The notes below the pieces were generated by a model, which made no database searches, was not told the DNA's origin, and saw nothing but the letters and a program-made list of their open reading frames with translations. A program made the translations under genes and the position numbers. This document shows, piece after piece, positions 5,942 through 37,378 of a stretch of DNA of 64,000 nt; positions within the stretch are counted from its first letter, which is position 1; each line of letters begins with the position of its first letter. The DNA lies in IMG/VR virus record IMGVR_UViG_3300028275_000006, positions 148,543-212,542 of that record. One strand, given 5' to 3'.

Positions 5942-6474
5942 TTTTTAAATCCTGGCTTTGGTAAGTGGTTGCGGCCGTAACTAATTCTACTGCCTATAAT
6001 TTGTTCTAATGCTGTATGTAAGGCTTGTCCTGATAAATGTTTACGCAACCATTTTTCTGCTAAGTTGTTAATAATCTTTTCATTAGCGTGTGCAAAGCCG
6101 CCTTTACTTTTAGCGTGTACATAAGCGTGATATGCTTCGTGGGCCGCAACAGCAACGTCTCGTGCCGCGGTGCTGTCTAGATTTGGTAAGTTGATACTGC
6201 CAACGCCGTCGCCTGTATCCCTAAACATTGGATCTCCGCTACTCTGGTAGACATAATACATTCCAGGACCTAATTCGTCATCATCGTCAGTTACTCTATC
6301 TCTACCTAGAATATTTCTAACTACATCATATGCTGTCCAAAGCGTGGCTGCAGGTTCTCTGCTTAATTTTGTAGTTGGAAGCATTATTTTATCTTCAGGA
6401 TCGAAGTCACCATATCTTGCTTTTAAATCGGCGTCACTTGCTTCTGCTTCTTTTATAAATTCTTTTGCTCTCAT
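5938..6474 (-). CDS. MRAKEF-family protein with HExxH zinc-metalloprotease-like motif; true start 6474
   Basis: ATG at 6474 gives MRAKEFIKEA; HEAYH with downstream NEKIIN. Confidence 0.7.
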   Translation of the reverse strand: MRAKEFIKEAEASDADLKARYGDFDPEDKIMLPTTKLSREPAATLWTAYDVVRNILGRDRVTDDDDELGPGMYYVYQSSGDPMFRDTGDGVGSINLPNLDSTAARDVAVAAHEAYHAYVHAKSKGGFAHANEKIINNLAEKWLRKHLSGQALHTALEQIIGSRISYGRNHLPKPGFKK

Positions 6475-6614
6475 GATCTTGGTGCCGCGCCGTTTCGAGT
6501 AGCAGGATCCCATGAGTGGCAACCCTTGGGTCGTCCGTCTTTGTCGCAAAATGCTATTCCGGCGCAGCCTGCTAAGGTTGTAATAATTGCTAATATTAAG
6601 ATGTTTTTCAGCAT
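6471..6614 (-). CDS. 47-aa lipoprotein (MLKNILILAIITTLAG-C...) missed by the ORF track
   Basis: Lipobox LAGC; TAAATA 4 nt upstream; ATGA overlap with next gene. Confidence 0.75.
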   Translation of the reverse strand: MLKNILILAIITTLAGCAGIAFCDKDGRPKGCHSWDPATRNGAAPRS

Positions 6615-6632
6615 CCAATATTTAGTTAGATT

Positions 6633-9026
6633 TTATTGGCGAACAACTGTGCTACAACCCGCTGGATTTGTACAACTTTGAATGATGCTAAATGATTTGC
6701 CGCCTGTTTGTTGCAGGTCAACACTGGCTGGGCCACCTGCGTTAGTTACATCAATAACTGCTCTGTTAGCAGTATTTCCTGTTTGTGTCACTAGTGCTGA
6801 GTTGTTATTTCCTGTTAGTGTAATATCAGCGAAATGGCCAGCACCGCCAGACTGTGTAGTGTTTACAGTATTAATATCGCCTGTAACTTTACTGAACAAT
6901 ATGTGATTACCGGTTTGTGTATGATTTACAGTATTACCATTTCCTTGTATTTTAGTTTCAGCATAATTTGAACCACTAGCATTTGACTGATTAGTAGTTA
7001 TGTTATTGCCCCACCCAGGCACTTCTTGCTTTAAGTAGTTACTGCCAGTTTGAGTATTATTAACAATATTGTTGTTTCCTTCTAAGGTAAATTCGATTTT
7101 GTTCTTAGTACCACTTTGTGTAATAGTTACATTATTGTTAGTACCGTATGTTTGTGTGATGTACAATTCGTTATTGTAGTTTTGTGTACCGTTGTTCCAA
7201 GTATTAATTCTAGTTTGTTTAACATCTATATCTGCTGGAGGAACGTATGAGCCACCGCTACCTATAACTTGATCACCAGGCGCATTTGTTTGTGTAATTG
7301 TTCCACCTTCAACTACTGGTCCTAATAAAACTGTTGTACCCGACACGTCAACTACTGCGCTGTTAGAATAAACAAATCCACTAGTGTCAATTGTATTTGT
7401 TTCAGTAATCCACCCTGTAGTAAATGCAGAGTTAGGTACGTTCATACGGCCTGCACCGTAGTCCCATTGAAAACGTAGTCCATAGCCGCCGGTGTCGTTC
7501 CAGTACCATGCTTCAAAATTATAAGTCTGTCCTGCTACTATGTCTATCCAGCCAGACGCTGTATAGCCACCTATACTCTGAAGTTGGAATGTAGATCTAT
7601 CGTTGATAACTGTTTGTCCGTTTACACTCATAACAAATCCGTCATCGCTGTTGCTATAGAAGTATAATCTATATACAGTACCTGCAGGATAATTTTGTGT
7701 CGTCGGAGCAGTAATCGTTCCGTTGAATCTAACTAAGGTACCAGTGTCCATATTTGGAAAACTGCCGTTAGTCGGAACATAAACTCCGTTACTAGTTGTA
7801 CCAATACTAACAGGCTGTCCACCAGGTGGCATATCAGGTACACGATATGGCCCTAACCAGTTTTTAATACAACCTAACCAACCGCAGTTATAAGTGTAAG
7901 GATCGAATTTGTAGACTTTATAGTTTAATCCCTGCTGTATGTTTTGTGTTGTAGTTGTTGCTGTGCCGTTTGCTTCTATGGTGCTGCCATTAACGCCGGT
8001 TGTAGTAACTGTATTAATTGGTGTTGTAGTTGTTGTCAGAACACCGTTTACAATTTTTGTAGTTACTACGTTAGACGCAACCTTAGTTTGATATACTGCT
8101 TCAGTACCATTTGTACTTGTGCTAGTTCCGTCGCTGTAAGTTGTTGTAGTTACAGGTGTGCGATAAACAGTAGTTGTATTACCATTAACCACAGTTCTAG
8201 TTGTATAAGTTACACTAGTTCCTGTTACTGTAGGAGTCGGAGCAGGAGCCGCACCGGCAGTTGCGCCCGTGCCAGCATTGGTCACTGACATTGTGTTATT
8301 ATATCCACCAGCAGTACCACTAGTAGTACCACCAGTAGCACTAGGGCCGCCACCGTTAGCGTTAGCAACTAAGCCAACTGTACTCGAACCAGGCACTCCA
8401 TCGCTGTTAACGATACAGGCATTTGATCCGCCCCATGCACCTTGACAAGCACCGAACCCTGGATTTGATACCCAACCTTGTGCTGTTATATTATTATAAG
8501 GCCCAAACTCCGGGTTATACAATAAGTTGCCGCCGCCATTAAGTTGGAATGTAGGAGCACGATACCAAGGACCATAATCACCTGCCCAGTAACTTCCATC
8601 AATACCGTACATACTGACTGTGGCATAGGCTACTTGGCTTGCTTGTGCCGCAGTAAGCGTTGCACTGATAGTTACTGTAGTCCAAGGTACCGCAGTATCA
8701 ATACAAGGATTACCACACACAGCATTTGGGTTTGGTAAGTTAGCAGAGTTAGTTGAGTTTACGCTAGTGATTAATCCACCACTGCTGTTATAGAACTGTA
8801 TCTTTACGTTAGCCGTATCACTTTGTCCTGCACGGCCGCCGCCGTTGTGTGCTAGTACACTCATTGTAAATGTACCGCCTTGTTGCATATTACTATCAAA
8901 CACTACTTGTTGACTAATTGTAGTAGTAACATAAGCAGTAGCAATAGCATTATAAGTCACAGCCTGACTATGTGCGCTAATGCACACAGTTAAAAACACA
9001 AGGAACTGTAATAAACGTTTTATCAT
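6633..9026 (-). CDS. secreted 797-aa protein: FBA-like lectin domain, Thr-rich linker, PA14 domain, C-terminal curlin-like repeats
   Basis: Signal peptide; GIDGSYWAGDYGP; SDDG...GQTYNFEAWY; repeated (I/V)xQxGxxN. Confidence 0.75.
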   Translation of the reverse strand: MIKRLLQFLVFLTVCISAHSQAVTYNAIATAYVTTTISQQVVFDSNMQQGGTFTMSVLAHNGGGRAGQSDTANVKIQFYNSSGGLITSVNSTNSANLPNPNAVCGNPCIDTAVPWTTVTISATLTAAQASQVAYATVSMYGIDGSYWAGDYGPWYRAPTFQLNGGGNLLYNPEFGPYNNITAQGWVSNPGFGACQGAWGGSNACIVNSDGVPGSSTVGLVANANGGGPSATGGTTSGTAGGYNNTMSVTNAGTGATAGAAPAPTPTVTGTSVTYTTRTVVNGNTTTVYRTPVTTTTYSDGTSTSTNGTEAVYQTKVASNVVTTKIVNGVLTTTTTPINTVTTTGVNGSTIEANGTATTTTQNIQQGLNYKVYKFDPYTYNCGWLGCIKNWLGPYRVPDMPPGGQPVSIGTTSNGVYVPTNGSFPNMDTGTLVRFNGTITAPTTQNYPAGTVYRLYFYSNSDDGFVMSVNGQTVINDRSTFQLQSIGGYTASGWIDIVAGQTYNFEAWYWNDTGGYGLRFQWDYGAGRMNVPNSAFTTGWITETNTIDTSGFVYSNSAVVDVSGTTVLLGPVVEGGTITQTNAPGDQVIGSGGSYVPPADIDVKQTRINTWNNGTQNYNNELYITQTYGTNNNVTITQSGTKNKIEFTLEGNNNIVNNTQTGSNYLKQEVPGWGNNITTNQSNASGSNYAETKIQGNGNTVNHTQTGNHILFSKVTGDINTVNTTQSGGAGHFADITLTGNNNSALVTQTGNTANRAVIDVTNAGGPASVDLQQTGGKSFSIIQSCTNPAGCSTVVRQ

Positions 9027-10129
9027 TTTTGTATCAAGGTAATAATAGTATTACCTCCCTGATTTATTCTGTTCTTAAATTCTAAATTGCCCTGTGTTTG
9101 TAATATTGTTGAGTTTTGTGTGAGTGGTGTTTTAACACATTGTATGTCAGCACCGTTGTCGCGACAGAGTTCAACACTCATATCATCTTTGTAGGCTATA
9201 ATGCCACTGGACTTTTTATAGTCTGGTAGCACAGGATCTACAGGATCTAAAAACTTTTGATCCAGTATGTTTCCCACAATGTCGAATAAGTTAGCAAGGA
9301 AATCATTAGACAAAAAGTTTTTGGCTAACTTATCTTCATAAATCATATTGGCCTGCATATCTAAATAATTCTCCAAACCTTTCTCTTTTAAAAAGTCAAA
9401 GTCTAAAGCATTAAATGTTCTCTGTTGTTCTTGTTGTGCTTGTTTGACTTCGCGCGGAGGACTGACAATTAACATATTGCCAATGGCCATTTCACTTAGA
9501 TTTAATACTTTAGGCGGTGTAGGAGGTTGTGTTCTACTTTGAACTTTAGTTACTTGGAAGGGTTGATTTAGTATTACAGTACCTACATCATTGCTAACTT
9601 CAATACTGCCAGTCTTACAGTTAGTTTCAATATCTCTAACTGAGCGTGTTGGTCTATCATTAGGACAACTAGGTAAAAGAATAATTGTACTTTCGCCTAG
9701 CTCGTCTACAGTGGCAGTAAAGTCAGTACCGCGTACAGCAACAGTAGCACTAGGAGTAGAAAGGGCCACATTCTGAGGCGAATTCTTAGCAATCTGTCCA
9801 GACGCATAACGAACTGTGCCAAGAGCAATCTTAGCACCTAGTTTACCCGCCTTACTTTTTGGATCATAAACGAAATCATCAATTACAAGTTTAGAATTTT
9901 CATTGACTTGGACTTTAGTATCGTCCTCAAATGTTATCCCCACCTTGCCCTGCTGGGTCTTGATCGCATCGTTCATTTCCACTCCAGTCCCTTTCGACGC
10001 CGTTAGTGTCGAATTCTGTCTCTGGATAGTCGGGGGTGTATTGATTTGTTCCGTTACTTTGCCTATCGCGGCGTAGGCCAACGATGTACTCAGCAACGGA
10101 ACGCATAATACTACCATCCATAATTTCAT
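9023..10129 (-). CDS. periplasmic FecR-domain protein
   Basis: Signal peptide; GVEMNDAIKT, ITFEDDTKVQVNENSKLVID, TPSATVAVRGTDF. Confidence 0.85.
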   Translation of the reverse strand: MKLWMVVLCVPLLSTSLAYAAIGKVTEQINTPPTIQRQNSTLTASKGTGVEMNDAIKTQQGKVGITFEDDTKVQVNENSKLVIDDFVYDPKSKAGKLGAKIALGTVRYASGQIAKNSPQNVALSTPSATVAVRGTDFTATVDELGESTIILLPSCPNDRPTRSVRDIETNCKTGSIEVSNDVGTVILNQPFQVTKVQSRTQPPTPPKVLNLSEMAIGNMLIVSPPREVKQAQQEQQRTFNALDFDFLKEKGLENYLDMQANMIYEDKLAKNFLSNDFLANLFDIVGNILDQKFLDPVDPVLPDYKKSSGIIAYKDDMSVELCRDNGADIQCVKTPLTQNSTILQTQGNLEFKNRINQGGNTIITLIQK

Positions 10130-10138
10130 GGAACCCTC

Positions 10139-11113
10139 TTAGTTTTTCTGTAAAATAGTGTAAGTGTTGCCACTTCCTGATATAGCAAGATTAGTTAGAT
10201 TGCTAACTGATCCTTGTTGTGTAATACCAATAGTATTAGTACTACCTGTTACAGATAACGTTGTGCTGTGTCCAGTAGCAGATCCACCTGTTTGTGCAAG
10301 TGTAATGCCATTGCTACCGCCTGTTACAGTAATACTAGCATAGTGATCGTACGCACCAGTTTGTGTTACGTCTGTAGTATTACCAGAACCTGTGATGTTG
10401 ATAATTGCTTGAGCACCAGTTACACCGTATGCACTCTGTGTTACAGATGTAGTGTTAGTTGCACCAACAGTTGTTAGACTAACTTGACCTTTGTTTCCGG
10501 TCATGTTAAGTGTAGTTGCGTTGCCGCCGCCACCTGTTTGACTAACAGTTGCTACAGTTTCATCAGCGTTGATTGTACCTGTAAATGTGTTGTTAGCACC
10601 ACCACTAGTTCCAACAGTTAATTGGTTACTTGTACCAGTCATGTTAAGTGTTGTAGTTGCACTACCGCCACTTTGAACAAAACTAACAACGTTACCACTG
10701 GCTGTGCCTGTACCATTATTGTTAATATTAATGTAACCTGTGTTTCCACCACCACTTACTTGGTAATTTAAATTCACACCAATATTAGCATAACCTTGTA
10801 CAGTACCACCTTGTGTTGAGTTAACACCTAACGCCAATACGTTAGTTGCTCCTGTTTGCTCAATGTTGATAGTCTGTGCGGCACCAGTTAGTTTAGCAGG
10901 ATCAGTTGTTCCACCTGCTGTGCCATTTAATAATATACCCTTTACTTTGTTTCCTGCTCCGTCTTGAGTCATAGTAATAGTACTATTATCGCCGGACTGA
11001 TCAATGTAAATGCTATTGTCAGCCGCATAACCCAATGTTGTCATTGCAGACAACACCAGAATTGTGAGTAATTTTCTCGACAACCCACCAGCGCCTGTGA
11101 TTCTCTTATGCAT
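10139..11113 (-). CDS. curlin-repeat (CsgA/CsgB-like) beta-solenoid secreted protein
   Basis: Signal peptide; many Q-x-G-x-x-N repeats; Gly/Thr/Asn-rich. Confidence 0.8.
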   Translation of the reverse strand: MHKRITGAGGLSRKLLTILVLSAMTTLGYAADNSIYIDQSGDNSTITMTQDGAGNKVKGILLNGTAGGTTDPAKLTGAAQTINIEQTGATNVLALGVNSTQGGTVQGYANIGVNLNYQVSGGGNTGYININNNGTGTASGNVVSFVQSGGSATTTLNMTGTSNQLTVGTSGGANNTFTGTINADETVATVSQTGGGGNATTLNMTGNKGQVSLTTVGATNTTSVTQSAYGVTGAQAIINITGSGNTTDVTQTGAYDHYASITVTGGSNGITLAQTGGSATGHSTTLSVTGSTNTIGITQQGSVSNLTNLAISGSGNTYTILQKN

Positions 11114-11196
11114 CGTTTTTACAGAATTAGGTTATCTTCCCTAACTCGCTCCTTGGTCTAAGACCATTAAAAAATTTAAAGTGCTACCTCTCTTTC

Positions 11197-12366
11197 TTAT
11201 TTTTGTTTGTTAACTACTTCTTTTTTAACAAACCCTTTACGCTTCTCTACGTCCTGCACTTGTACCCAATCACCTTCGCTCCCGGTTATGAATACTCGTG
11301 TATTTGGCTTAAACTGCCAAGTCCTTTGACTCTTTTCGTTTGGCTCCTTGTATATAAACTGAGCATCCTTTAGAATTGCTTCTGTAGGTAACTTCTCTAG
11401 TTCTTTTGCGGCGGTACTGGGTACGGCCTTGGTTTCGGTTTCGGATTTGGTTTGTGATTGAACCACGACATCTTTCTTCTCCTCTACTTTAACTTCTTCT
11501 TTAATCTCAGAGCTAATTACCGGCTGGGCCGCTGGTGCTGGTACAGGTGCCTTGGCCGCTGGTGCGGATTCTGGTTTAAACTCCCATACACCTTTACGTT
11601 GTCCTTCCTTAATTAACTCTACGACTGCCATTTCAATAGTTGCCTTTGTAGCGTAAGTGCCAGGTTCATTGATAGTTAAACCTGCTTCTGCTTCAAATGC
11701 CTTAGTGCCTGCGTCAAAGAATTTTAATGCAGATACGCTGTCTGCTGAACTTAAGATAGTCTTTTGTACTGTCACTGTGGCTAATACCTTACCAGTGTTT
11801 ACGCTAACTGCTCGTAAACTTACTGTTACTGTATCAGTGCTCCACTGTGTATTTTTGCCTATGCCAAATATACGTTGACCTACACCACCGCTGGTAGTGC
11901 TTTGATCGTAGCCTACTATTCCGCCTTCTACAATAATTCCAGCGAATTGCATTGGTAGCAATGGTTTAGCATCTTTACCTTCATATGCTTCGCGCATTTG
12001 CCTAATAATTAAACGTTCTTTAGTTAGGTTATCAATGCCCACACGTTCTACAACGTCGAACCATTGACCGCGTCCTACATTTTGTAATGCCTGTATTAAG
12101 AATGTTTCTGCACCCTGTGTCACTGCTGTTGATAAACTGGCAATGTTTGCCTGCGGTCTACGTTGACCTGTTTTATCAGTAAAACTATAAACGGCCACGC
12201 TTAGTGGTCTTCCAGCGATTGGACTAGGTATTGTATCAAATTCTTTCTTAACATTAGTCATTTGCCCTGTAACTTCAGGACTCTTGTCTAGTACTCCAGT
12301 TGTCTGCATAACAGCACAACCTGAAAGCATAGTTAAAACTGCTAGGGATAGTATTGTCTTTTTCAT
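11197..12366 (-). CDS. csgG: CsgG curli secretion channel lipoprotein with a C-terminal SH3b-like extension
   Basis: Lipobox LSGC; AVYSFTDKTGQ, STAVTQGA, WFDVVERVGIDNLTKERLIIR, EAEAG; Pro/Ala linker then GDWVQV..GFV. Confidence 0.9.
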   Translation of the reverse strand: MKKTILSLAVLTMLSGCAVMQTTGVLDKSPEVTGQMTNVKKEFDTIPSPIAGRPLSVAVYSFTDKTGQRRPQANIASLSTAVTQGAETFLIQALQNVGRGQWFDVVERVGIDNLTKERLIIRQMREAYEGKDAKPLLPMQFAGIIVEGGIVGYDQSTTSGGVGQRIFGIGKNTQWSTDTVTVSLRAVSVNTGKVLATVTVQKTILSSADSVSALKFFDAGTKAFEAEAGLTINEPGTYATKATIEMAVVELIKEGQRKGVWEFKPESAPAAKAPVPAPAAQPVISSEIKEEVKVEEKKDVVVQSQTKSETETKAVPSTAAKELEKLPTEAILKDAQFIYKEPNEKSQRTWQFKPNTRVFITGSEGDWVQVQDVEKRKGFVKKEVVNKQK

Positions 12367-12369
12367 GTC

Positions 12370-12909
12370 TTAGTTCCCCGGCATTTGGAATGAACTTAAT
12401 GGAACATACACACAACTCATTCCAGTGTCTGTGCATGATGCTGTACTTGGGTTAGTGGCTGTAGGATCTGCAATCTTTAACATAATGCAGTATCCGTAGG
12501 CTGTTGAACAGTTAGCATCGTTAGCACTACTAACTCTGCCCCAACTAATATAGTTGCCCTGGAAGTCAATGTTGCCAGAACAGTTTGTGTTGCTACTTGC
12601 TGTACAGTTGTTATTGGCAAACATAGCGGTTGCTACGTTCTGACTAATCTGTGCATAGATACGTGATTCTAAGTTACTAACAAACTTAGCAAGGTTGGTG
12701 TTTTTCTTATCTGCGGCTGCTTTGTCAATTTCAGCCTGTAGTTTATCTGCACGTTCTTTCTGACGTGTGCGCTCTTGATTCTCAATGGTTAATACATGAC
12801 TGCTGTAACCTACGCCGTTAAAGGCAGGACTCTTAAAGGTGTAATCACCTAAAGGTGCTGCCGATACAATCATAGGCAATAATGCTATAAGTGATAATAG
12901 TTTTTTCAT
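12370..12909 (-). CDS. csgF: CsgF-like curli assembly protein
   Basis: Signal peptide; YTFKSPAFNG, FVSNLESRIYAQIS; directly upstream of csgG. Confidence 0.8.
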   Translation of the reverse strand: MKKLLSLIALLPMIVSAAPLGDYTFKSPAFNGVGYSSHVLTIENQERTRQKERADKLQAEIDKAAADKKNTNLAKFVSNLESRIYAQISQNVATAMFANNNCTASSNTNCSGNIDFQGNYISWGRVSSANDANCSTAYGYCIMLKIADPTATNPSTASCTDTGMSCVYVPLSSFQMPGN

Positions 12910-13023: not shown

Positions 13024-13713
13024 TTATTTTCTATCACCAAACAACTGTAGTAAATTAATGAACAGATTAATAAAATCCATATATAGTGTTAATGCACCTG
13101 TTACTTCGGTTGCAGGATCAGAGTCGATTGAAACCATTTCTCGTATTTGCTGTGTATCGTAAGCAGTTAATCCTAGAAAGATAATAATTGCTAATGCACT
13201 GATAACCATGGCCATTACACTACTACCAATAAAGATGTTAACAATACTGGCAATAACAATAGCAATCAATCCAATGAACATAAACTGTCCAAGACTTTCC
13301 AAACTACGTTTTGTAAAGTATCCATAGAAGCTCATTGTACCAAACAAGATCGCCGCACCCATAAACGCACTAACAATACTGCCCATGGTAAAGATAGCAA
13401 AAATTGTAGCAAAGCTCAAACCCATTAATGCCGCAAAACCATGTAAGCATAGTTGGGCGACTTGTTTACTAGGGTTATTAGATAGTACCATGCTAACACC
13501 AAAGATAGCAACCAGTGGTGCAAAAATTACAATCCACTTCATTACACCTGTAAAGAAGAATTGTAACAATTCTGGGCTAGTACCTACAAAGTAACTAACA
13601 ATCATAGACACAAGAACTGCTAGGCTCATGTGTCCATAGACACGACCCATTGCTTCATTGATCTGTGCGGCTGAACGGTAAATTCCAGTACCTGTGTAAC
13701 TTGCACCAAACAT
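13024..13713 (-). CDS. Bax inhibitor-1/YccA family membrane protein
   Basis: 7 TM; LTAYDTQQIR, GALTLYMDFINLF. Confidence 0.9.
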   Translation of the reverse strand: MFGASYTGTGIYRSAAQINEAMGRVYGHMSLAVLVSMIVSYFVGTSPELLQFFFTGVMKWIVIFAPLVAIFGVSMVLSNNPSKQVAQLCLHGFAALMGLSFATIFAIFTMGSIVSAFMGAAILFGTMSFYGYFTKRSLESLGQFMFIGLIAIVIASIVNIFIGSSVMAMVISALAIIIFLGLTAYDTQQIREMVSIDSDPATEVTGALTLYMDFINLFINLLQLFGDRK

Positions 13714-17931: not shown

Positions 17932-18378
17932 TTACTTAACTTCTTTCACTTCAATCTTACGTGGCAGAAGTGCTTCAGGAACAATGCGCTCGATTTGAAT
18001 TGTAAGCACACCATCCTTAATTTCTGCTGACTTGATTTCCATGTGTTCTGCTAGAGTAAATCTACGTTCGAAATCACGGAAAGCAAGACCTCTGTGTAAG
18101 TACTCAACTTGGTATTCGCCTTCGTTAGCATTGATTGCCTTCTCGCCGCGAATAGTTAATTGATCACCTTCCACTTCTACTGCAACTTCATCTTTACCGA
18201 ATCCTGCTACAGCAACAACTATATTATACTGGTTTTCTCCAGACTTTTCAATATTATATGGAGGATAGTTGTTCGAAATCTGATGTGCAAAGCGTGTTTC
18301 GAAAGTATCGAATAGATTGTCGAAACCGATTAATGCTCTGTTTAGAGCGGCTGTGTCAAAACGTGTTAATTGTGTCAT
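17932..18378 (-). CDS. small heat shock protein Hsp20 (IbpA-like)
   Basis: NYPPYNIEK, AVAGF, YLHRGLAFRDFERRFTLA, DGVLTI. Confidence 0.93.
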   Translation of the reverse strand: MTQLTRFDTAALNRALIGFDNLFDTFETRFAHQISNNYPPYNIEKSGENQYNIVVAVAGFGKDEVAVEVEGDQLTIRGEKAINANEGEYQVEYLHRGLAFRDFERRFTLAEHMEIKSAEIKDGVLTIQIERIVPEALLPRKIEVKEVK

Positions 18379-18435
18379 TTTATATCTCCTTTAATTAAGC
18401 AAGAATTTTAGTAGGGCCCCACCCGGGCACCCTAC
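18376..18435 (-). promoter_or_regulatory. ROSE-like RNA thermometer in the hsp20 5' UTR
   Basis: UCUUGCU-UAAUUAA-AGGAGA pairing SD with a bulged G; upstream GUAGGG/CCCUAC hairpin. Confidence 0.7.
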
Positions 18436-18444
18436 ATAACGAGT

Positions 18445-20310
18445 TTAGTTTGTTTCCTTAAACTCGGCATTGATTGCATCTTCCTGAACAGGTTCAAATG
18501 GCTTGTCCTGTTTGGCCTGTGCAATCGCTTGACTGGCCACTGCTAGTTCGCTAGTCTTTTGTACGATAGCGTCTTTGTCAGAACCTGTCAATTCTGTTTG
18601 AAGTGCTTTAACAGCATCTTCGATCTTTGTTTTATCTGTGTCTGAAAGTGTTGTTTCTTTCATGTCGTTTTCAACATTGTTGATCAACGCCTCGGCTGTG
18701 TTCCTAGCATCGATAAGTTCACGTGCCTTCTTATCTGATTCGGCATTAACTTCTGCATCACGAACCATTTGTTCGATCTGCTCTTTGCTTAGACCACTGT
18801 CACTCTTAATTGTGATTTGATTTTCTTTGCCGGTGTTTTTATCTTTAGCACTAATTTTCATAATGCCGTTAGCATCGATGTCAAATGTAACTTCAATCTG
18901 TGGAGTGCCACGACGTGCTGGAGCAATACCGTCTAACTTAAACTCACCCAGGAGTTTGTTGTATTGGAATAGTTCACGCTCGCCTTGTGCTACTTTGATA
19001 TCAACTGCTGGTTGATTATCTTCTGCTGTGCTAAACACTTGGCTAGCCTTAGTAGGTATAGTTGTGTTCTTTTGTACAAGTTTAGTAAACACACCTCCCA
19101 TAGTTTCAATGCCTAGTGACAATGGTGTTACGTCTAACAATAGAACGTCTGTACGATCACCTGCTAGTACTGAACCTTGAATAGCCGCACCAACTGCTAC
19201 TGCTTCGTCTGGGTTAACGTCTTTGCGTGGAGCCTTACCGAATAGTTTTTCAACTGCTTCTTGTACCTTGGGCATACGTGTTTGCCCACCAACAAGAATA
19301 ACTTCGTCAATTTCTGATGGAGTAACACCTGCATCCTTCATAGCAACCTTACATGGTTCGATACTACGTTGGATTAGTTCTTCTACCAATGCTTCTAACT
19401 TAGCACGAGTAATCTTAACATTCATGTGCTTAGGACCACTTGCGTCTGCTGTGATGTAAGGTAAGTTAACATCAGTGCTGGCACTGCTAGATAACTCAAT
19501 CTTGGCTTTTTCAGCGGCTTCTTTTAGACGTTGTAAGGCCAACATGTCTTTCTTAAGGTTCATGCCTGACTCTTTCTTAAACTCGTCGACCAAGTAGTCC
19601 ATAATACGTTGGTCAAAGTCTTCACCACCTAAGAATGTGTCGCCGTTAGTGCTTAGTACTTCGATTTGTTTTTCGCCATCCACGTTGGCAATTTCAATGA
19701 TCGATACATCGAAAGTACCACCACCAAGGTCATAAACAGCAACTTTGCGATCTGCTTTGTCGTTTTTATCAACACCATAAGCAAGAGCTGCCGCAGTAGG
19801 CTCGTTAATAATACGCAATACTTCCAAGCCTGCGATTTTTCCAGCATCCTTAGTTGCCTGTCTTTGGCTGTCATTAAAGTATGCGGGAACTGTGATAACT
19901 GCTTGAGTAACTTTTTCACCTAAATAATCCTCTGCTGTCTTTTTCATCTTACGCAGAACTTCAGCACTAATCTGCGGAGGTGCTAATTCTTTACCCTGTG
20001 CGCGAACCCATGCATCTCCATTCTTGGATTCCATGATTTCGTAAGGCATTAGGTCAATATCTTTTTGTACAGCCTGTTCTTTGAACTTACGTCCAATAAG
20101 ACGCTTGGCCGCATAGATTGTGTTTTTGGGATTTGTTACTGCTTGACGTTTAGCACTAGCACCTACAAGTACTTCGTCTGTAGAATAGGCAACAATACTA
20201 GGTGTAGTTCTTGCACCTTCGCTGTTTTCAATAACTTTGGAATTTCCTGACTCGATGACTGCTACGCATGAATTGGTAGTACCCAAGTCGATACCGATGA
20301 CTTTGCTCAT
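18445..20310 (-). CDS. dnaK: Hsp70 chaperone DnaK
   Basis: [47 protein letters not shown]. Confidence 0.98.
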
Positions 20311-20687: not shown

Positions 20688-20921
20688 TTAATACATTTTT
20701 TTAGGTAGTTGTTGTTTACGCAGTTCTTTTTGCCAACGATTCTTAGCCGCAGACTTTGCTCGCTTACGAGCAGTTGTTGGCTTTTCATAGAACTCGCGAT
20801 CTCTTAGTTCCTGCAATAATCCGCTATCCTGTATTTTCTTTTTGAAACGGCGTAGAGCTCTTTCAACGGGTTCACCGTCTTTTACAGTAACTCCACTACC
20901 ACGTAGTTGTTTATCCCTCAT
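20688..20921 (-). CDS. rpsU: ribosomal protein bS21
   Basis: VTVKDGEPVERALRRFKKK, REFYEKPTTARKR. Confidence 0.93.
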   Translation of the reverse strand: MRDKQLRGSGVTVKDGEPVERALRRFKKKIQDSGLLQELRDREFYEKPTTARKRAKSAAKNRWQKELRKQQLPKKMY

Positions 20922-21340: not shown

Positions 21341-22708
21341 TTACTCCTTGGTCTTGGTCACTTGTTGATTCTGTTCCTTCACTATGTAGGTTGTCTTTTT
21401 TTTTGAACTGTCAGGTTCTATGACTTCTGTAAGATCGGGCTTGTATCTGTCTCCTGTTACTTCGGATATATAATCCCCAGGACGCTCGTCCAAAGTTTCC
21501 TTCCAAGGTAACTCTTCAATTACACCAGATTCTTTTAATTTTTCCTGATGCTTAATAGTGTCATCTGGATTCTGTTCCTTCCAAATGCGCTTGGCTTCTT
21601 TTTCTTTTTCAAGTTCGCGTTCTGCTTCTTCAATCATTTTATTCCATTGCTCTAGTCCAATGTCTTCAACAATGTCCTTTTCTTCTTCTGGAATATAAGA
21701 TCTAGCATGTTCTACTATTTCAGCATCTTCATCGTCGGCATCTTCTACTTGATAGTTTTGGATGTCTGCGTGTTTAGGATACATCCAACCAATTGGATGC
21801 GGATCAGCACTTTCTTTAATCTGTTCGACTTGCTCTTCGACTAATGGACCATCGTCTGCTTCGTATTTAGGTTCATTCTGTGCATCAATTGGAGTTGGCA
21901 CAATTGGCGCTGGCTCAGGTTCTTCCTCTTCTTGTTTCCTAAACCATTGGAAACTATATTGGCTAGCCAGCAACAAAATAACAGCCAATGGGTCAAATAC
22001 TATAACAATAATAATGATTACCCAGGTAACTGCTTTTTCTAAAATCGTTTCATTTGTCTCGCCATAGACAAACGATGCGATATACTTAATTGGACCAACT
22101 TCGGCTTCGACCTTGCGTACCTCGGCGGCAATAGGCGCACGGGCATCATTAAGTTCCGCGATAGACTTCTGCGACTGTGATATTTCTGCTTGAAGTCTAG
22201 CACGTTCTTTCTGCTGGGACTTACGCAAAGCCACAGCCTTGTCGGCACCTTTTTCATCTGCTGAGCGACCCAATACTTGGTCCACTCCTTCATCCATCTG
22301 TTTAAGTGCTTTACGGTTTGCTTCAATATTTTCTTTTTCGGTTTTGATCTTTTCATCATAGATAGCAATCTTACTTTGAACATCGCCGCTTACTAGACTT
22401 TGGTCACTGTGTGCTTTGGATAAGAAACCAAAAATACCCATAGAGGTAATAAGCATTAGTATAGCAATAGCGGATAATAGATAACCTCTAATAAAGTTAG
22501 GTGCCCTGGACCAATTTTGTTTTAGCCAAACAGTTGCGGCTAACTTACTAACTTCTAGGGCTACACCCATAACAATGATAGGAATAACAGCCGCAGAGAA
22601 AATGGCCATTAGGCCCGCTACGCTGTAATAAATGGCTACAGCGGATATGGTTAATCCGCTGAACAATGTTAGCCAAGCAATTAGTTTGTCACTAGTTTGA
22701 TATCGCAT
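21341..22708 (-). CDS. membrane protein: 3 TM, coiled coil, TM, acidic cytoplasmic tail
   Basis: Hydrophobic N-terminus, heptad-rich middle, FDPLAVILLLA, Glu-rich C-terminus. Confidence 0.75.
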   Translation of the reverse strand: MRYQTSDKLIAWLTLFSGLTISAVAIYYSVAGLMAIFSAAVIPIIVMGVALEVSKLAATVWLKQNWSRAPNFIRGYLLSAIAILMLITSMGIFGFLSKAHSDQSLVSGDVQSKIAIYDEKIKTEKENIEANRKALKQMDEGVDQVLGRSADEKGADKAVALRKSQQKERARLQAEISQSQKSIAELNDARAPIAAEVRKVEAEVGPIKYIASFVYGETNETILEKAVTWVIIIIVIVFDPLAVILLLASQYSFQWFRKQEEEEPEPAPIVPTPIDAQNEPKYEADDGPLVEEQVEQIKESADPHPIGWMYPKHADIQNYQVEDADDEDAEIVEHARSYIPEEEKDIVEDIGLEQWNKMIEEAERELEKEKEAKRIWKEQNPDDTIKHQEKLKESGVIEELPWKETLDERPGDYISEVTGDRYKPDLTEVIEPDSSKKKTTYIVKEQNQQVTKTKE

Positions 22709-34960: not shown

Positions 34961-35653
34961 TTAGGGTAGTCTATAATATTGTGCCACCCTGTCACACCAG
35001 CGATTTGTCCAGTAGTCAAAATCTGAAGGTTCTAATATAAACTCTTGATATTCGTAGTCTTTGCTACACATTAAAATAACACCCTTGCGTATATTAGTGC
35101 CGTGTATTTCGTTGTGTGCTAGAGCGTAGGCTGTTAACTGTAAAAAGTAATCCTCGATCCACTCAAGTTTCTTGGGTTTGTTAGTCTGCTTAAAGTCTAG
35201 GATACTTTCGTCGCCTTCGTGTATGCCTACACAGTCTGTGGTTCCTGCATATAATTCTGGGAAATACAAAGGAACTTCACTGCCCCATACTTCCTTAATT
35301 TTAGGGAATCCTTGTGCAATAACAATCTTAGCCATGTCCAGGCTTTGTTGTGCATAAGGGTTACTCACACTTTCTTTTAGTGGCTCACCTTTAATGTAGT
35401 TTTCTAGGTATGTGTGCATCCTAGTTCCGCGACTGGCGGCTTCGGTGGTAATCTGTTGTGCTTTTTGTTCGCCAACAGCCTTTTTCCAATTAGCCAGTGC
35501 TTCACGGGCTTCTGCTGGTTTAGTTTTATCTAGGATTGTTGTTACACTGGGAACTTTAAACCCATCTGGGCAAGCATATAAACGCTTGCCAGTGGATTCA
35601 TCTCTATTAAGTTTAGTGTAGGTATATTTTGGCTGTAATAATGTCGTAGTCAT
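34961..35653 (-). CDS. PD-(D/E)xK exonuclease
   Basis: PSVTTIL, RGTRMHTYLE, EVPL, YAGTTDC, ILDFKQT, QLTAY. Confidence 0.88.
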   Translation of the reverse strand: MTTTLLQPKYTYTKLNRDESTGKRLYACPDGFKVPSVTTILDKTKPAEAREALANWKKAVGEQKAQQITTEAASRGTRMHTYLENYIKGEPLKESVSNPYAQQSLDMAKIVIAQGFPKIKEVWGSEVPLYFPELYAGTTDCVGIHEGDESILDFKQTNKPKKLEWIEDYFLQLTAYALAHNEIHGTNIRKGVILMCSKDYEYQEFILEPSDFDYWTNRWCDRVAQYYRLP

Positions 35654-35659
35654 GACGCA

Positions 35660-35688
35660 ATTATAACATTATGTTTACAGCCTGTCAA
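35660..35688 (-). promoter_or_regulatory. consensus sigma70 promoter for the exonuclease
   Basis: TTGACA-17-TATAAT. Confidence 0.8.
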
Positions 35689-36017
35689 GAGGCCATTGCT
35701 GTATTTGTTGCGTGTTTTGCCATTTGTGCAACAGCGTCACTGCCTGTGTCGCCGTCTACTGGACCTTGTGGTGGTGTTTGATTTTTAGTCTTTAGTTCAA
35801 TGCCGTTTTGATCAAATCGTGCTACTAATTTTTGTAGATTAGGATCTGCATCGAAGGTTAATTTAAATGTGTCGTAGTCGAATTCTTCTTGGCCAATGTT
35901 TGTCATGAAACGATTAATTTCGTCCCATCTAAAATTGCCTGGAATGTTTTTGCTATCGGCTTTACCGATCAAACTCCTAAGAATTAGGATTAGGTTTGGA
36001 TCGGTTGCCTCAATTAC
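35685..36017 (-). CDS. start-less ORF, probable -1 frameshift extension of 36014..36901
   Basis: Frame open from 36047; no ATG/GTG before TTG 35972, and that TTG is only 1 nt from AGGAG. Confidence 0.6.
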   Translation of the reverse strand, partial: VIEATDPNLILILRSLIGKADSKNIPGNFRWDEINRFMTNIGQEEFDYDTFKLTFDADPNLQKLVARFDQNGIELKTKNQTPPQGPVDGDTGSDAVAQMAKHATNTAMAS

Positions 36018-36023
36018 TTTTTT
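35958..36023 (-). promoter_or_regulatory. candidate -1 frameshift signal: A_AAA_AAG plus downstream hairpin
   Basis: Heptamer 36023-36017; hairpin 36009-35958 (GGC/GCC, ACCGAT/ATCGGT, CAAAC/GTTTG, TCCTAA/TTAGGA). Confidence 0.7.
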
Positions 36024-36901
36024 TTTGGTGCTAGTAAACTTGCTAGTTTACGGCTAAACTCGATTGATTCACGAGTAGCACGACCTGCGGGCTCTTCGCC
36101 ACCTGCCGCTGGAGCAGCCGCTCCTGCTTCTTCTTCACCGCCAACTACTGTGCCTGATTCAGCACCTGCTTCTGGTTCTTCTGCGCCTGCTTCTGGTGCT
36201 GGCTCTGCGCCCATTGTTGGAGCGGCTCCTTCACCTTCGCCTGTTAAGATAGCAACTGCTTGTGTTAGTTGCTGACGTGAACTTTCTAATGCTGTGTAGA
36301 TAGTTGCAAGGGCTGGTTTAACAACTCCCTCGAACTCCATTGATGTATCACTGCCCATTTCGTCTCTTATAGAGTCAATTAATTCTAACATTGATTCGGC
36401 CTGCATATTTGCTGTGTCTTCCATCCAGCCTGTAACGCGGTCAACCATGTCACGAGCGGCCATGATTAACTCGGCCTTTTCTTCTTCGCCTTCACGTAGT
36501 ACAGATTCTACTTGTACTACGGCTTTGTTCTTATTAACTTTATTCTGTAATTCTTCTGGAAGATCTTCAAATGCGATAACACCTTGCTCTACTTTTTCTA
36601 ATACCATGCTTTCCATTTCAGTATAGCCGCTGTCAGTAGTCATTTCGTTGCTACGCTCTTCGATAGCACGATTTAACACATCTAGGAACAGTTTGTTCTT
36701 AGAATATGTTTCGTCTTCGTAGACAGCATTGTAGCTCTCGCTGGCTTCAAACTGACTAATCTTTGTACGTAACTTGTTACGTGCATCTTCTAACTGTTCA
36801 AGAGTGAAACTCTCTAAATCAATTTTCTGTCCAAATTGCTGGGCTACGCTTTCGTTTAACGCCTTGGCAGTTAATGGTTTGTTAAGTTCTGTAATACGCA
36901 T
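36014..36901 (-). CDS. acidic coiled-coil protein, probable prohead core/scaffold-like
   Basis: Glu-rich, heptads, many (L/I/V)xE sites; late promoter TATAAATA at 36932-36939. Confidence 0.55.
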   Translation of the reverse strand: MRITELNKPLTAKALNESVAQQFGQKIDLESFTLEQLEDARNKLRTKISQFEASESYNAVYEDETYSKNKLFLDVLNRAIEERSNEMTTDSGYTEMESMVLEKVEQGVIAFEDLPEELQNKVNKNKAVVQVESVLREGEEEKAELIMAARDMVDRVTGWMEDTANMQAESMLELIDSIRDEMGSDTSMEFEGVVKPALATIYTALESSRQQLTQAVAILTGEGEGAAPTMGAEPAPEAGAEEPEAGAESGTVVGGEEEAGAAAPAAGGEEPAGRATRESIEFSRKLASLLAPKKK

Positions 36902-36934
36902 GGTTAAAATCTTCCTGTGAAGTTGTTTTATTAT

Positions 36935-37378
36935 TTATACAATCGACGAGTAGAACAGGTTGTCGATTCGAGCCTTGGCTGTCTTAGCATAATCCTTGAC
37001 TAACTCAAATCTCCAGTAAGCACTTTCCCTAGTCACAGGGTCCTTTGCGTTCTGGGCTGTTTTTCTGTAAAACTGTGAATCTATATAGTTCTTTCTAAAA
37101 ATCTCATCGTTGTTTTTAATATCATCGATGCTGTGTTTTTTGCCTTTTTCGTGCATTTTGCATATAGCAAAAGCACTTACTTTTAAAAATACTGTGGCCA
37201 CGTGAATTTTGCGTTTGTCTGCTAAAATTACGTTCCAATTATCGTCTGTACCTTTTACAATGATATACTTCTTGTATCGTATCTGACGTTTGTTTACTGC
37301 TACAAAGATGCCCTGCTTGACAACTATGTCATAGAGCATGGAATCTAAATCTGCGGCGGCTTGTTTAATATCAAACAT
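36935..37378 (-). CDS. hypothetical protein
   Basis: ORF track, coupled operon. Confidence 0.7.
   Translation of the reverse strand: MFDIKQAAADLDSMLYDIVVKQGIFVAVNKRQIRYKKYIIVKGTDDNWNVILADKRKIHVATVFLKVSAFAICKMHEKGKKHSIDDIKNNDEIFRKNYIDSQFYRKTAQNAKDPVTRESAYWRFELVKDYAKTAKARIDNLFYSSIV

What the first reader, a model, noticed from the sequence alone, without database searches (positions are those of the whole stretch)
35685..36901. Candidate programmed -1 ribosomal frameshift in a scaffold/core-like head gene
Seen: the 295-aa gene ends CCA AAA AAA AAG TAA, containing A_AAA_AAG (36023-36017). A hairpin starts 7 nt later (36009-35958: GGC/GCC, then 17 bp in three stems). The -1 frame continues KKK-VIEATDPNLILIL... 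for 110 aa to 35685 and has no usable start of its own (TTG only 1 nt after AGGAG). Known: A_AAA_AAG with a 3' stem-loop 5-9 nt away is the bacterial dnaX/IS frameshift signal; phage frameshifts are best known in tail chaperone (G/GT) and some capsid genes. Inferred: 295-aa and 405-aa isoforms are made; V-I-E just after the junction resembles a T4 gp21 protease site that could release the extension inside the head.
Basis: partly seen in the sequence, partly recalled or inferred. Interest (0 to 1): 0.85.

Follow-up and report, generated by a model that had tools for sequence, protein, structure and literature searches.

The report
Conserved poly-A frameshift in phage gene
A run of nine A's at the end of a late phage gene lets part of its product continue into a start-less downstream reading frame; relatives across aquatic metagenomes keep this signal, so it is a real programmed frame change, though the protein's function and the slipping machine (ribosome, RNA polymerase or both) are still open.

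Summary
The 295-codon ORF (36901-36014, minus strand) ends CCA AAA AAA AAG TAA. A 20-bp hairpin starts 7 nt later, and the -1 frame stays open for 110 codons with no usable start. The run is A9 in DNA and in RNA-library contigs, so it is not an assembly error.

Of 94 distinct homologous junctions (33-100% protein identity), 90 keep nine or ten A's followed by a 98-155-codon -1 ORF. Three lack a long run and give the second ORF its own ATG. None is an in-frame fusion. The codons right after the junction evolve as coding sequence in the -1 frame only.

A frame change producing 295-aa and 405-aa proteins is therefore very likely. The mechanism is not settled. The in-phase A_AAA_AAG, the adjacent stop and a covarying hairpin point to ribosomal -1 frameshifting. 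The strict length of nine, and a second conserved A9G site in the same window (21404-21395) with no stimulators, point to RNA-polymerase slippage. I think both contribute.

The "scaffold/core head gene" label is not shown. The gene has a conserved T4-type late promoter and a [LIVM]-x-E motif at the junction, and that motif is about 11-fold depleted inside the extension. This fits protease release but remains an inference.

The parts
36932..36939 (-). TATAAATA, a T4-type late-promoter motif 30 nt upstream of the ORF1 ATG
   Evidence: One search finds only 3 copies in the window. ATAAATA lies within -60..-15 of the ORF1 start in 83 of 87 distinct homologous loci, against a background of 0.016 per 45-nt window. 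NATAAATA/TATAAATA is the late promoter of T4-like phages (PMC2984593).
36014..36901 (-). ORF1: 295 codons plus TAA. The predicted protein is all-alpha, with an N-terminal helical domain, a long helical hairpin (residues 116-220), a disordered acidic Gly/Ala/Pro linker (226-278) and a conserved C-terminal helix ending in KKK.
   Evidence: AlphaFold model with pLDDT 74.5. More than 3500 homologues, nearly all ending ...KKK. Weak match of residues 133-223 to phrog_14154 'virion structural protein'.
36018..36026 (-). A9 run, the site of the frame change. Together with G36017 it forms two tandem in-phase slippery heptamers (A_AAA_AAA and A_AAA_AAG, the latter at 36023-36017).
   Evidence: Among 94 distinct junctions: A9G 74, A10T 13, A9C 3, A8G 1. 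Three have no long run (L023 keeps a six-A remnant, L015 and L054 none) and have their own ATG.
36014..36016 (-). 0-frame TAA stop directly 3' of the heptamer ('shifty stop' context)
   Evidence: The stop lies 0-1 nt after the run in 67 of the 92 junctions that have a run of six or more A's.
35958..36009 (-). RNA hairpin of 20 bp (3+7+4+6) that starts 7 nt after the heptamer. It is the candidate 3' stimulator of ribosomal -1 frameshifting.
   Evidence: -21.2 kcal/mol, z -4.6. In the 8-sequence subclade alignment A4, 91.9% of cells are paired, 5 pairs change on both sides, and the covariation score is reached by 2 of 500 shuffles; slid registers give 19-51% paired.
35685..36017 (-). Extension ORF in the -1 frame: 110 codons plus TGA. 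It encodes a conserved ~100-aa alpha/beta domain with winged-helix-like topology and a basic C-terminal helix. It has no start of its own.
   Evidence: AlphaFold model with pLDDT 78.6 and a core near 90. The top fold matches are winged-helix domains but none is significant. Substitution pattern in the -1 frame: third codon positions 928 against 433 and 311; synonymous codon changes 565 against 94 and 45 in the other frames.
36009..36017 (-). Codons V-I-E just after the junction, an instance of a conserved [LIVM]-x-E motif (putative prohead-protease site)
   Evidence: The motif ends 3-10 residues after the run in 85 of 91 junctions. At least some of the other six are A10 junctions whose Ile codon the script skipped. 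Inside the extension there are 8 occurrences against 91.8 +/- 8.7 expected from shuffles.
35970..35972 (-). TTG that gene callers use as the start of a 95-aa ORF. I reject it as the real start.
   Evidence: It lies 1 nt after AGGAG. Neither the TTG nor the AGGAG is conserved. It falls at residue 16, in the middle of predicted helix 1 (residues 7-22; pLDDT 94 for residues 11-20).

Best explanation
The A9G run at the end of ORF1 is a programmed -1 recoding site. Most expression events stop at TAA and give the 295-aa protein. A fixed minority continue in the -1 frame and give a 405-aa fusion, ORF1 plus ...APKKK-VIEATDPN... and the extension domain. I think two processes add up. First, the bacterial RNA polymerase that transcribes this late gene slips on the nine-A run and makes some A10 mRNAs, which read straight through. 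This is the stimulator-independent part and explains why exactly nine A's are kept across the family and at a second gene. Second, on A9 mRNAs the ribosome slips -1 on A_AAA_AAG. In the window's clade this is helped by the adjacent stop codon and by the hairpin 7 nt downstream. Shown here: the sequence features, their conservation, coding constraint in the -1 frame, the lack of a start, and hairpin covariation. Inferred: that a shift occurs, and how the two mechanisms share it. For function I propose, with low confidence (about 0.3), that ORF1 is a late, virion- or prohead-associated helical protein. It would carry the winged-helix-like extension as cargo, and a T4-type prohead protease would release the cargo after the conserved [LIVM]-x-E at the junction.
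For: Sequence and hairpin. A9 in DNA and RNA-library contigs. Conservation: 90 of 94 distinct junctions (33-100% ORF1 identity) have A9 or A10 followed by a 98-155-codon -1 ORF that is open only 4-37 codons upstream, and none of these 94 is an in-frame fusion. -1-frame coding right after the stop. The extension is a real folded, conserved domain whose first helix lies upstream of any start codon. It is a bona fide gene elsewhere, with an ATGA stop/start overlap to an ORF1 that then lacks KKK and the A-run. For the ribosomal part: the heptamer is in phase in 88 of 91 long runs. The hairpin covaries. Strong structure (z < -3) occurs in the 60 nt downstream in 19% of junctions against 1% upstream, and starts 4-10 nt after the run in several unrelated clades. 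For the polymerase part: the run length is 9-10 in 90 of 94 junctions although a heptamer needs only 6 A's plus G. The preceding codon always ends in A unless a third AAA compensates. The base after the run varies (G, C or T). A second A9G site at 21404-21395 is kept in 23 of 53 homologues, and its -1 frame encodes the motif (GYVQNAEQ..W.RI) that is in frame in the 26 homologues without a run. That site has no downstream structure and no nearby stop. Literature: slippage is efficient at 9 A/T with bacterial RNA polymerase (PMC5009743), and A_AAA_AAG alone gives only about 0.3% ribosomal shifting in E. coli (PMC4066793). Late promoter. Protease motif.
Against: No direct evidence for either product exists: no proteomics, no reporter, no read-level RNA data. 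The RNA-library contigs show only A9. Contigs hide minority variants, and RNA libraries can hold DNA, so this neither supports nor excludes slippage. Most lineages lack a predicted 3' structure, and the sister clade's conserved hairpin lies about 47 nt downstream, too far for a classical stimulator. There is no upstream SD-like stimulator. The host and its tRNA-Lys and polymerase properties are unknown. The functional model rests on a weak PHROG match, a promoter motif and motif statistics from related, non-independent sequences. A prohead protease was not located in this genome.
Confidence: 0.55

Rival explanations
1. Purely ribosomal -1 programmed frameshifting of the dnaX/IS911 type. tRNA-Lys slips on A_AAA_AAG, stimulated by the 3' hairpin and the adjacent stop, and transcript heterogeneity plays no meaningful part.
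For: The in-phase heptamer, 7-nt spacer and 20-bp hairpin form a textbook cassette. The hairpin covaries. Independent hairpins at canonical spacing occur in other clades. The stop is adjacent in 67 of 92 junctions. Both A9G sites in the window share the same phase and the same following G.
Against: This model gives no reason to keep nine A's when six plus G suffice. Yet 90 of 94 junctions and 23 of 23 site-2 runs have nine or more, including a synonymous position. About 75% of lineages and all site-2 homologues lack predicted stimulators. Without stimulators this heptamer shifts at about 0.3% in E. coli. Bacterial RNA polymerase is reported to slip efficiently on A9.
Confidence: 0.22
2. Purely transcriptional slippage, as in Thermus dnaX, the Shigella spa13 example given in the review, and many IS elements. 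The polymerase adds one A on the A9/T9 tract. The hairpin is unrelated to recoding and serves, for example, mRNA stability.
For: Run length of nine conserved at two genes. The following base and, rarely, the phase vary while the length is kept. Most lineages lack stimulators. The late gene is presumably transcribed by host core polymerase. Literature.
Against: A downstream RNA hairpin cannot act on a polymerase that has not yet transcribed it. Yet such hairpins are enriched just after the run, at 5-10 nt spacing, in several clades, and the window's one covaries. The heptamer phase is almost invariant. RNA-library contigs show only A9 (weak evidence).
Confidence: 0.18
3. No recoding. The extension is an ordinary separate gene started at the TTG (35972), at ATT (36014-36012), or by termination-reinitiation at the TAA.
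For: In a minority of lineages the extension really is a separate, translationally coupled gene with ATGA or TAATG overlaps. Gene callers annotate a 95-aa TTG ORF.
Against: In 86 of 91 run-bearing junctions no ATG/GTG/TTG lies within 12 nt of the run. The first such codon is usually 23-288 nt downstream. The TTG and AGGAG are not conserved, their spacing is 1 nt, and the TTG would cut predicted helix 1. The 15 codons before it are under -1-frame coding constraint. Wherever a start codon exists at the junction without recoding, the A-run has been lost (L015, L054, L159, L160).
Confidence: 0.04
4. Artefact or decay: a homopolymer sequencing or assembly error splits one 405-codon gene, or the downstream frame is a dead remnant.
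For: Homopolymers are error-prone. One in-frame fusion exists in a distant relative (P0224/L158).
Against: The same A9 appears in many independent assemblies and in RNA-library contigs. The split arrangement is kept in 90 of 94 diverged junctions. The extension is under purifying selection and folds confidently. Even the fused relative keeps A9G and has a -1 stop two codons later, which would still give two products.
Confidence: 0.01

Closest known systems
E. coli dnaX and IS911/IS3-type bacterial -1 ribosomal frameshift cassettes
   Same: The slippery heptamer A_AAA_AAG is in phase. A stem-loop lies 7 nt downstream. Two products share an N-terminus at a set ratio. One relative (L158) even has the dnaX-like layout, in which the shift gives the short form.
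   Different: There is no upstream SD-like stimulator. The run is nine A's, not six. The 3' structure is clade-specific rather than family-wide. The shift extends the protein, as in IS transposases, rather than truncating it. The gene family is unrelated.
Programmed transcriptional slippage (Thermus thermophilus dnaX, Shigella spa13, IS elements)
   Same: A homopolymeric tract of nine bases equals the RNA-DNA hybrid length. The length is conserved and no RNA stimulators are needed. The spa13 case also yields a C-terminal extension.
   Different: Here the run also forms a perfect in-phase ribosomal heptamer with a stop and, in some clades, a hairpin. Transcript heterogeneity has not been observed. 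The context is a late gene of a T4-like phage.
Phage frameshift-made C-terminal extensions (T7/T3 capsid 10A/10B, lambda tail chaperone G/GT, Listeria phage capsid and tail genes)
   Same: A late phage gene makes a minor longer isoform through a -1 shift near its 3' end, and the extension is a separate small domain.
   Different: This is not a major capsid or tail-chaperone gene, neither by homology nor by position (it lies between small unknown genes and an exonuclease). The signal is A9G. The same extension is a stand-alone coupled gene in other lineages, which is not known for G/GT.
T4 prohead core and internal proteins (gp22, gp67/68, IPI-III with a capsid-targeting sequence cleaved by gp21)
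   Same: Late expression signal. An acidic, helical protein of about 30 kDa. A [LIVM]-x-E motif sits at the boundary of a small cargo domain that itself avoids the motif. Stand-alone extensions and ORF1 both start M-[RK]-[LIF]-x-E, which recalls short cleavable N-terminal leaders (T4 sequences recalled from memory: a lead only).
   Different: No sequence or fold homology was detected. The gene is not in a head module. HTVC008M, the nearest cultured relative, has its own gp21/gp22/gp23 block and no ORF1/extension homologue. Virion presence and cleavage are untested.

Membership tests
Bacterial/phage -1 programmed ribosomal frameshift site | X_XXY_YYZ heptamer in the 0-frame phase at the ORF overlap | tested here: met
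   A_AAA_AAG at 36023-36017 is in phase. 88 of the 91 runs of eight or more A's are in the same phase.
Bacterial/phage -1 programmed ribosomal frameshift site | Downstream -1 ORF that is conserved, coding, and lacks its own initiation signal | tested here: met
   110 codons in the window. -1 ORFs of 98-155 codons in 90 of 94 junctions. A start codon lies within 12 nt of the run in only 5 of 91. Synonymous bias is seen in the -1 frame only.
Bacterial/phage -1 programmed ribosomal frameshift site | Stimulatory RNA structure 5-9 nt 3' of the heptamer, supported by covariation | tested here: inconclusive
   Met in the window's subclade and in several other clades. Absent from about 75% of junctions and from the second site.
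Bacterial/phage -1 programmed ribosomal frameshift site | Upstream Shine-Dalgarno-like stimulator (dnaX/IS911 type) | tested here: not met
   There is no GGAGG-like element in the 30 nt upstream. The upstream 50 nt shows no excess structure. This feature is optional for the class.
Bacterial/phage -1 programmed ribosomal frameshift site | Trans-frame protein demonstrated | not testable with these tools
   This needs proteomics or a reporter assay.
Programmed transcriptional slippage | Homopolymeric A or T tract of about 9 or more bases at the ORF junction | tested here: met
   A9 at 36026-36018. A9 or A10 in 90 of 94 junctions. A second conserved A9 at 21404-21396.
Programmed transcriptional slippage | Selection on tract length rather than on codon phase or flanking bases | tested here: inconclusive
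   The length is strictly kept, including a synonymous third position, and the following base varies. But the phase is nearly invariant: only 3 of 91 differ.
Programmed transcriptional slippage | mRNA population with extra A's that are absent from the DNA | tested here: inconclusive
   Only assembled contigs of RNA libraries could be laid. They show A9 with no indel, but contigs drop minority variants.
T4-type prohead core / internal (capsid-targeted) proteins | Homology to gp22, gp67, gp68 or the IPs, or a position in the head module next to gp21 and gp23 | tested here: not met
   Pfam, PHROGs, PDB sequence and fold searches give no such match. The neighbours are small unknown genes, an exonuclease and a tailspike-like gene. 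HTVC008M keeps its head module elsewhere and has no homologue.
T4-type prohead core / internal (capsid-targeted) proteins | Late-gene expression from a (N/T)ATAAATA promoter | tested here: met
   TATAAATA at 36939-36932. ATAAATA is found upstream in 83 of 87 loci against a background of 0.016.
T4-type prohead core / internal (capsid-targeted) proteins | Cleavage after Glu in an L/I-x-E motif by the prohead protease, with the mature cargo lacking the motif | tested here: inconclusive
   The motif is conserved at the junction and about 11-fold depleted inside the extension. Cleavage was not tested, and no protease gene was located on an ORF1-bearing contig.
Phage tail assembly chaperone G/GT frameshift | Gene pair located between the major tail or tube gene and the tape-measure gene | tested here: not met
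   Conserved synteny is p148-p80-(NTase)-p66-p147-ORF1-extension-exonuclease-tailspike-like.

The most novel reading that the evidence does not exclude
This abundant, uncultured aquatic T4-like phage lineage uses a bare A9G tract as a general recoding device, read by both polymerase and ribosome, at several late or membrane genes. At ORF1 the device serves to tether a small winged-helix-like cargo domain to a helical carrier. The cargo would then be built into the prohead at a fixed ratio and cut free by the prohead protease. Other lineages would reach the same end with a separate, translationally coupled gene carrying the same short M-[RK]-[LIF]-x-E leader.
Probability: 0.2. Interest if true: 0.75.

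Novelty: new member of a known kind. Interest (0 to 1): 0.6.

Why it matters
Gene callers split this locus and start the second gene inside its first helix, so the fusion and a whole domain family are mis-annotated. The representative search alone found 699 clusters of that family at 50% identity. This is one of the best comparatively supported recoding sites outside tail-chaperone, capsid and IS genes. There are 94 diverged junctions and repeated switches between a frameshift fusion and coupled separate genes. One relative has a reversed, dnaX-like layout, and a second A9G site lies in the same genome. That makes it a natural system for asking when evolution picks polymerase slippage, ribosomal slippage or ordinary coupling to set a protein ratio. 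If the carrier, cargo and protease model holds, it would also show a new way for T4-like phages to load proteins into the head.

Tried and rejected
- **Known relatives.** Megablast and tblastn against 50,697 phage records found no close relative. The only hit was a partial match of ORF1's helical domain to a 593-aa hypothetical protein of Sinorhizobium jumbo phage Phosso, a member of phrog_14154.
- **Function searches.** Pfam and PHROGs gave nothing for the extension and only the weak PHROG match for ORF1. PDB sequence profiles and Foldseek against PDB and BFVD gave nothing significant: winged-helix-like hits for the extension at E > 0.1, non-specific helical hits for ORF1, and BFVD hits that are only uncharacterised members of the same family. 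The protein atlas returned only the protein's own family. Neighbouring small genes have no PHROG match.
- **RNA families.** Rfam has no family match at the junction.
- **Nearest cultured phage.** I fetched Pelagibacter phage HTVC008M whole and searched it with profiles of both parts. It has no homologue, and its single nine-A run (eight A's or fewer elsewhere) was not looked at further.
- **Prohead protease.** A scan with the HTVC008M prohead protease returned only HTVC008M-like contigs and none that carry ORF1. I could not show a T4-type protease in this genome.
- **Reads.** Read laying could use only Logan contigs, so the share of A10 transcripts could not be measured.
- **Other stimulators.** An upstream stimulator (SD-like element or nascent-RNA hairpin next to the run) is not supported. 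The hairpin is not an intrinsic terminator: no terminator-like site on the gene's strand, and RNA-library contigs run across it.
- **Internal starts.** The TTG and ATT starts are rejected.
Full report
**1. The observation**

On the minus strand the 295-codon ORF (36901-36014) ends CCA AAA AAA AAG TAA.
- The A-run is nine bases (36026-36018). With G36017 it forms A_AAA_AAG in the 0-frame phase.
- The -1 frame from G36017 reads V-I-E-A-T-D-P-N-L-I-L-I-L... for 110 codons, to a TGA at 35687-35685.
- That frame is open only 10 codons upstream of the junction. Its first ATG/GTG/TTG is the TTG at 35972, one base after AGGAG. Its first ATG is 111 nt from the run.

A nine-A run alone is not unusual here: 2 found, 3.5 expected. 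The case therefore rests on comparison with relatives.

**2. Not an error**

Seven IMG/VR contigs and two JGI contigs are identical across the junction. One of the JGI contigs is 304,615 bp and probably the source.

Logan contigs of one riverine DNA run and three riverine metatranscriptome runs bridge the run with A9 and no indel. Contigs hide minority variants, and RNA libraries can hold DNA. This fixes the majority sequence only.

**3. Conservation**

ORF1 has more than 3500 homologues. The 120 best are 285-346 aa apart from two truncated entries, none is about 405 aa, and nearly all end in KKK.

I collected 132 loci from viral and metagenome contigs, which gave 94 distinct junctions at 33-100% ORF1 identity.

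| Junction type | Count |
|---|---|
| A9 then G | 74 |
| A10 then T | 13 |
| A9 then C | 3 |
| A8 then G | 1 |
| No long run | 3 |

- All 91 long runs are followed by a -1 ORF, 98-155 codons long where complete.
- The 0-frame stop lies 0-1 nt after the run in 67 junctions.
- No ATG/GTG/TTG lies within 12 nt of the run in 86 of 91.
- None of the 94 is an in-frame fusion.
- The three junctions without a long run (L015, L023, L054) give the same domain its own ATG.

Among close pairs, differences in the 44 nt after the stop fall on the third codon position of the -1 frame (928, against 433 and 311). Synonymous codon changes number 565 in that frame, against 94 and 45 in the other two. The stretch between the stop and any possible start is therefore translated in the -1 frame.

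**4. The extension is a real domain**

An AlphaFold model built on 41 sequences has pLDDT 78.6, with a core near 90. Its topology is H-E-H-H-E-E plus a C-terminal helix.
- The best fold matches are winged-helix domains. None is significant.
- Helix 1 (residues 7-22) lies upstream of the TTG at residue 16, so the gene-caller ORF would be truncated.

A profile search of 1.84 billion representatives finds 699 clusters.
- 47 of the best 150 start M-[RK]-[LIF]-x-[ED]. All but three of them are stand-alone proteins of 107-134 aa.
- In the contexts I read, these overlap the stop of an ORF1 homologue by ATGA. That ORF1 lacks KKK and the run, and the synteny is the same.
- One distant relative is an in-frame fusion (P0224/L158). 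It still carries A9G and has a -1 stop two codons later, so a shift there would make the short form, as in dnaX.

The two-product design is thus kept in three different layouts. Frameshift fusion and coupled genes appear to have replaced each other more than once.

**5. Ribosome or polymerase?**

For the ribosome:
- The heptamer is in phase in 88 of 91 long runs, and the stop is adjacent.
- The window's hairpin is kept in its eight-sequence subclade: 91.9% of cells are paired and five pairs change on both sides. Some of those changes are doubly synonymous, for example ATC/AGG to ATT/AGA. Slid registers give 19-51% paired.
- Strong structure (z < -3) occurs in the 60 nt downstream in 19% of junctions, against 1% upstream. 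It starts 4-10 nt after the run in several unrelated clades. A 3' RNA structure cannot act on a polymerase that has not yet made it.

For the polymerase:
- The run is 9-10 bases almost everywhere, although six A's plus G would do.
- The preceding codon always ends in A (CCA, TCA, GGA) unless a third AAA compensates.
- The base after the run varies.
- About three quarters of lineages have no predicted stimulator.

A second A9G lies in the same window, at 21404-21395, 61 nt before the stop of a 455-aa membrane protein.
- It is kept with exactly nine A's, same phase and same G, in 23 of 53 distinct homologues.
- Its -1 frame encodes ...GYVQNAEQ..T[LI]W.RI... This is the very C-terminus that is in frame in the 26 homologues without a run.
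- It has no hairpin (mean z -0.3) and no nearby stop.

From the literature:
- Bacterial polymerase slips efficiently on nine A/T, the length of the RNA-DNA hybrid (PMC5009743).
- A_AAA_AAG without stimulators shifts only about 0.3% in E. coli (PMC4066793).

My reading is that the tract provides a basal polymerase-slippage route in the whole lineage. The window's clade, and some others, add ribosomal frameshifting. My rough probabilities:

| Reading | Probability |
|---|---|
| Recoding is real | about 0.9 |
| Both mechanisms contribute | about 0.5 |
| Ribosome only | about 0.2 |
| Polymerase only | about 0.2 |

**6. What phage, and what gene?**

The window shares several features with Pelagibacter phage HTVC008M and the Melnitz phages, which are T4-like (Kyanoviridae) (PMC7029224):
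- a syntenic curli block (CsgG, curlin-repeat genes and a cyclase);
- RNR, Hsp20, ribosomal protein S21, thioredoxin and an exonuclease.

HTVC008M has no ORF1 or extension homologue. Its gp21/gp22/gp23 head block is elsewhere.

The local order p148-p80-(NTase)-p66-p147-ORF1-extension-exonuclease-tailspike-like is conserved across the family.

ORF1 is preceded by TATAAATA (36939-36932). ATAAATA lies at -60..-15 in 83 of 87 loci, against a background of 0.016. This matches the T4 and cyanophage late promoter (PMC2984593). The exonuclease has its own perfect sigma-70-type promoter, which overlaps the extension's stop. ORF1-extension therefore looks like a late unit transcribed by host core polymerase.

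ORF1 is predicted all-helical with a long helical hairpin and a disordered acidic linker. Its hairpin domain weakly matches the N-terminus of phrog_14154 'virion structural protein'. This fits a virion or assembly role but does not show a scaffold.

**7. The protease idea**

A [LIVM]-x-E motif ends 3-10 residues after the run in 85 of the 91 run-bearing junctions, and such a motif also stands near the start of the stand-alone forms.

Inside the extension the motif occurs 8 times in 84 sequences, against 91.8 +/- 8.7 in shuffles.

| Motif inside the extension | Observed against expected |
|---|---|
| [LIVM]-x-E | about 11-fold fewer |
| [LIVM]-x-D (control) | 1.8-fold fewer |
| E-x-[LIVM] (control) | 1.4-fold fewer |
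| [AGS]-x-E | enriched |

ORF1 is not depleted: 657 observed against 720 expected.

T4-type prohead proteases cut after Glu, and T4 core proteins lose short N-terminal leaders (PMC5694885; PMC9958956). The L/I-x-E consensus is from my own knowledge.

The pattern fits a cargo released from a degradable carrier. The sequences are related, however, the protease was not found on these contigs, and nothing shows that the proteins enter the head. I give this model about 0.3.

**8. Verdict**

The mechanism is probably mixed, and the functional label is only partly supported. This is a new, well-supported member of known recoding classes, in an uncultured and widespread phage lineage. Its unusual features are the strictly conserved nine-A tract, a second site in the same genome, and the exchange with coupled separate genes.

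Noticed in passing
window 21395-21404 (minus strand), inside ORF 21341-22708: A second A9G run sits in the same codon phase (TCA AAA AAA AAG), 61 nt before the stop of a 455-aa membrane protein. 23 of 53 distinct homologues keep exactly A9G. Their -1 frame encodes the conserved C-terminal motif GYVQNAEQ..T[LI]W.RI, which is in frame in the 26 homologues that lack the run. There is no downstream structure and no adjacent stop. This is probably a second programmed frame change.
   Followed up: yes
window 35660-35688 (minus strand): A perfect sigma-70 consensus promoter (TTGACA, 17 nt, TATAAT, with TG) overlaps the stop of the extension ORF, just upstream of the exonuclease ATG at 35653. The exonuclease is probably an early gene, separate from the late ORF1-extension unit.
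   Followed up: no
L012, L013, L011, L115, L019, L125 and relatives, about 47-78 nt after the A-run (alignment A5, columns 57-88): The sister clade lacks the window's hairpin. It has its own conserved 12-bp hairpin (GGCAGGGC..GCCCTGCC type) inside the extension codons for I-G-R-A-D-Q-K-G-R-P-A, with two covarying pairs. It lies too far from the run for a classical frameshift stimulator, and its role is unknown.
   Followed up: partly
L158:2577-2600 (protein P0224, 517 aa): This is the only in-frame ORF1-extension fusion found. It keeps A9G (TCA AAA AAA AAG ATA AGT GAA) and has a TGA two codons on in the -1 frame. That is a dnaX-like reversed layout, or else an assembly indel. Only one contig carries it.
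   Followed up: partly
proteins P0121 (261 aa), P0122 (463 aa), P0124 (771 aa); context of P0124: In some lineages the extension domain is the N-terminus of a much longer protein with Gly/Ala-rich hydrophobic stretches. The position is still directly after ORF1 with a 4-nt overlap. No family match was found.
   Followed up: partly
window 3890-12909 (minus strand): A curli-type block is syntenic with Pelagibacter phage HTVC008M: a CHASE2-adenylate/guanylate cyclase, curlin-repeat proteins, a FecR-domain protein, CsgG with an added SH3 domain, and a homologue of the HTVC008M gene annotated CsgF.
   Followed up: partly
window 18445-20310, 17935-18390, 20688-20921, 13024-13713: The phage encodes a full DnaK/Hsp70 (about 68% identical to bacterial DnaK), an Hsp20, a ribosomal protein S21 homologue and a Bax1-I family membrane protein.
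   Followed up: partly
N-termini of ORF1 (window 36901-36884) and of stand-alone extension proteins (P0122-P0270): ORF1 starts MRITE[FL] in 109 of 120 homologues. 47 of the 150 top extension representatives (all but three of them stand-alone proteins) start M-[RK]-[LIF]-x-E-[VFI]. The shared short leader contains a [LIF]-x-E motif and may be a common targeting or cleavage signal.
   Followed up: partly
L020, L064 (TAATG) and L053 (GTGA) junctions: Three lineages keep A9G and also have a start codon overlapping the ORF1 stop in the -1 frame. They may be intermediates between the frameshift fusion and coupled separate genes.
   Followed up: no
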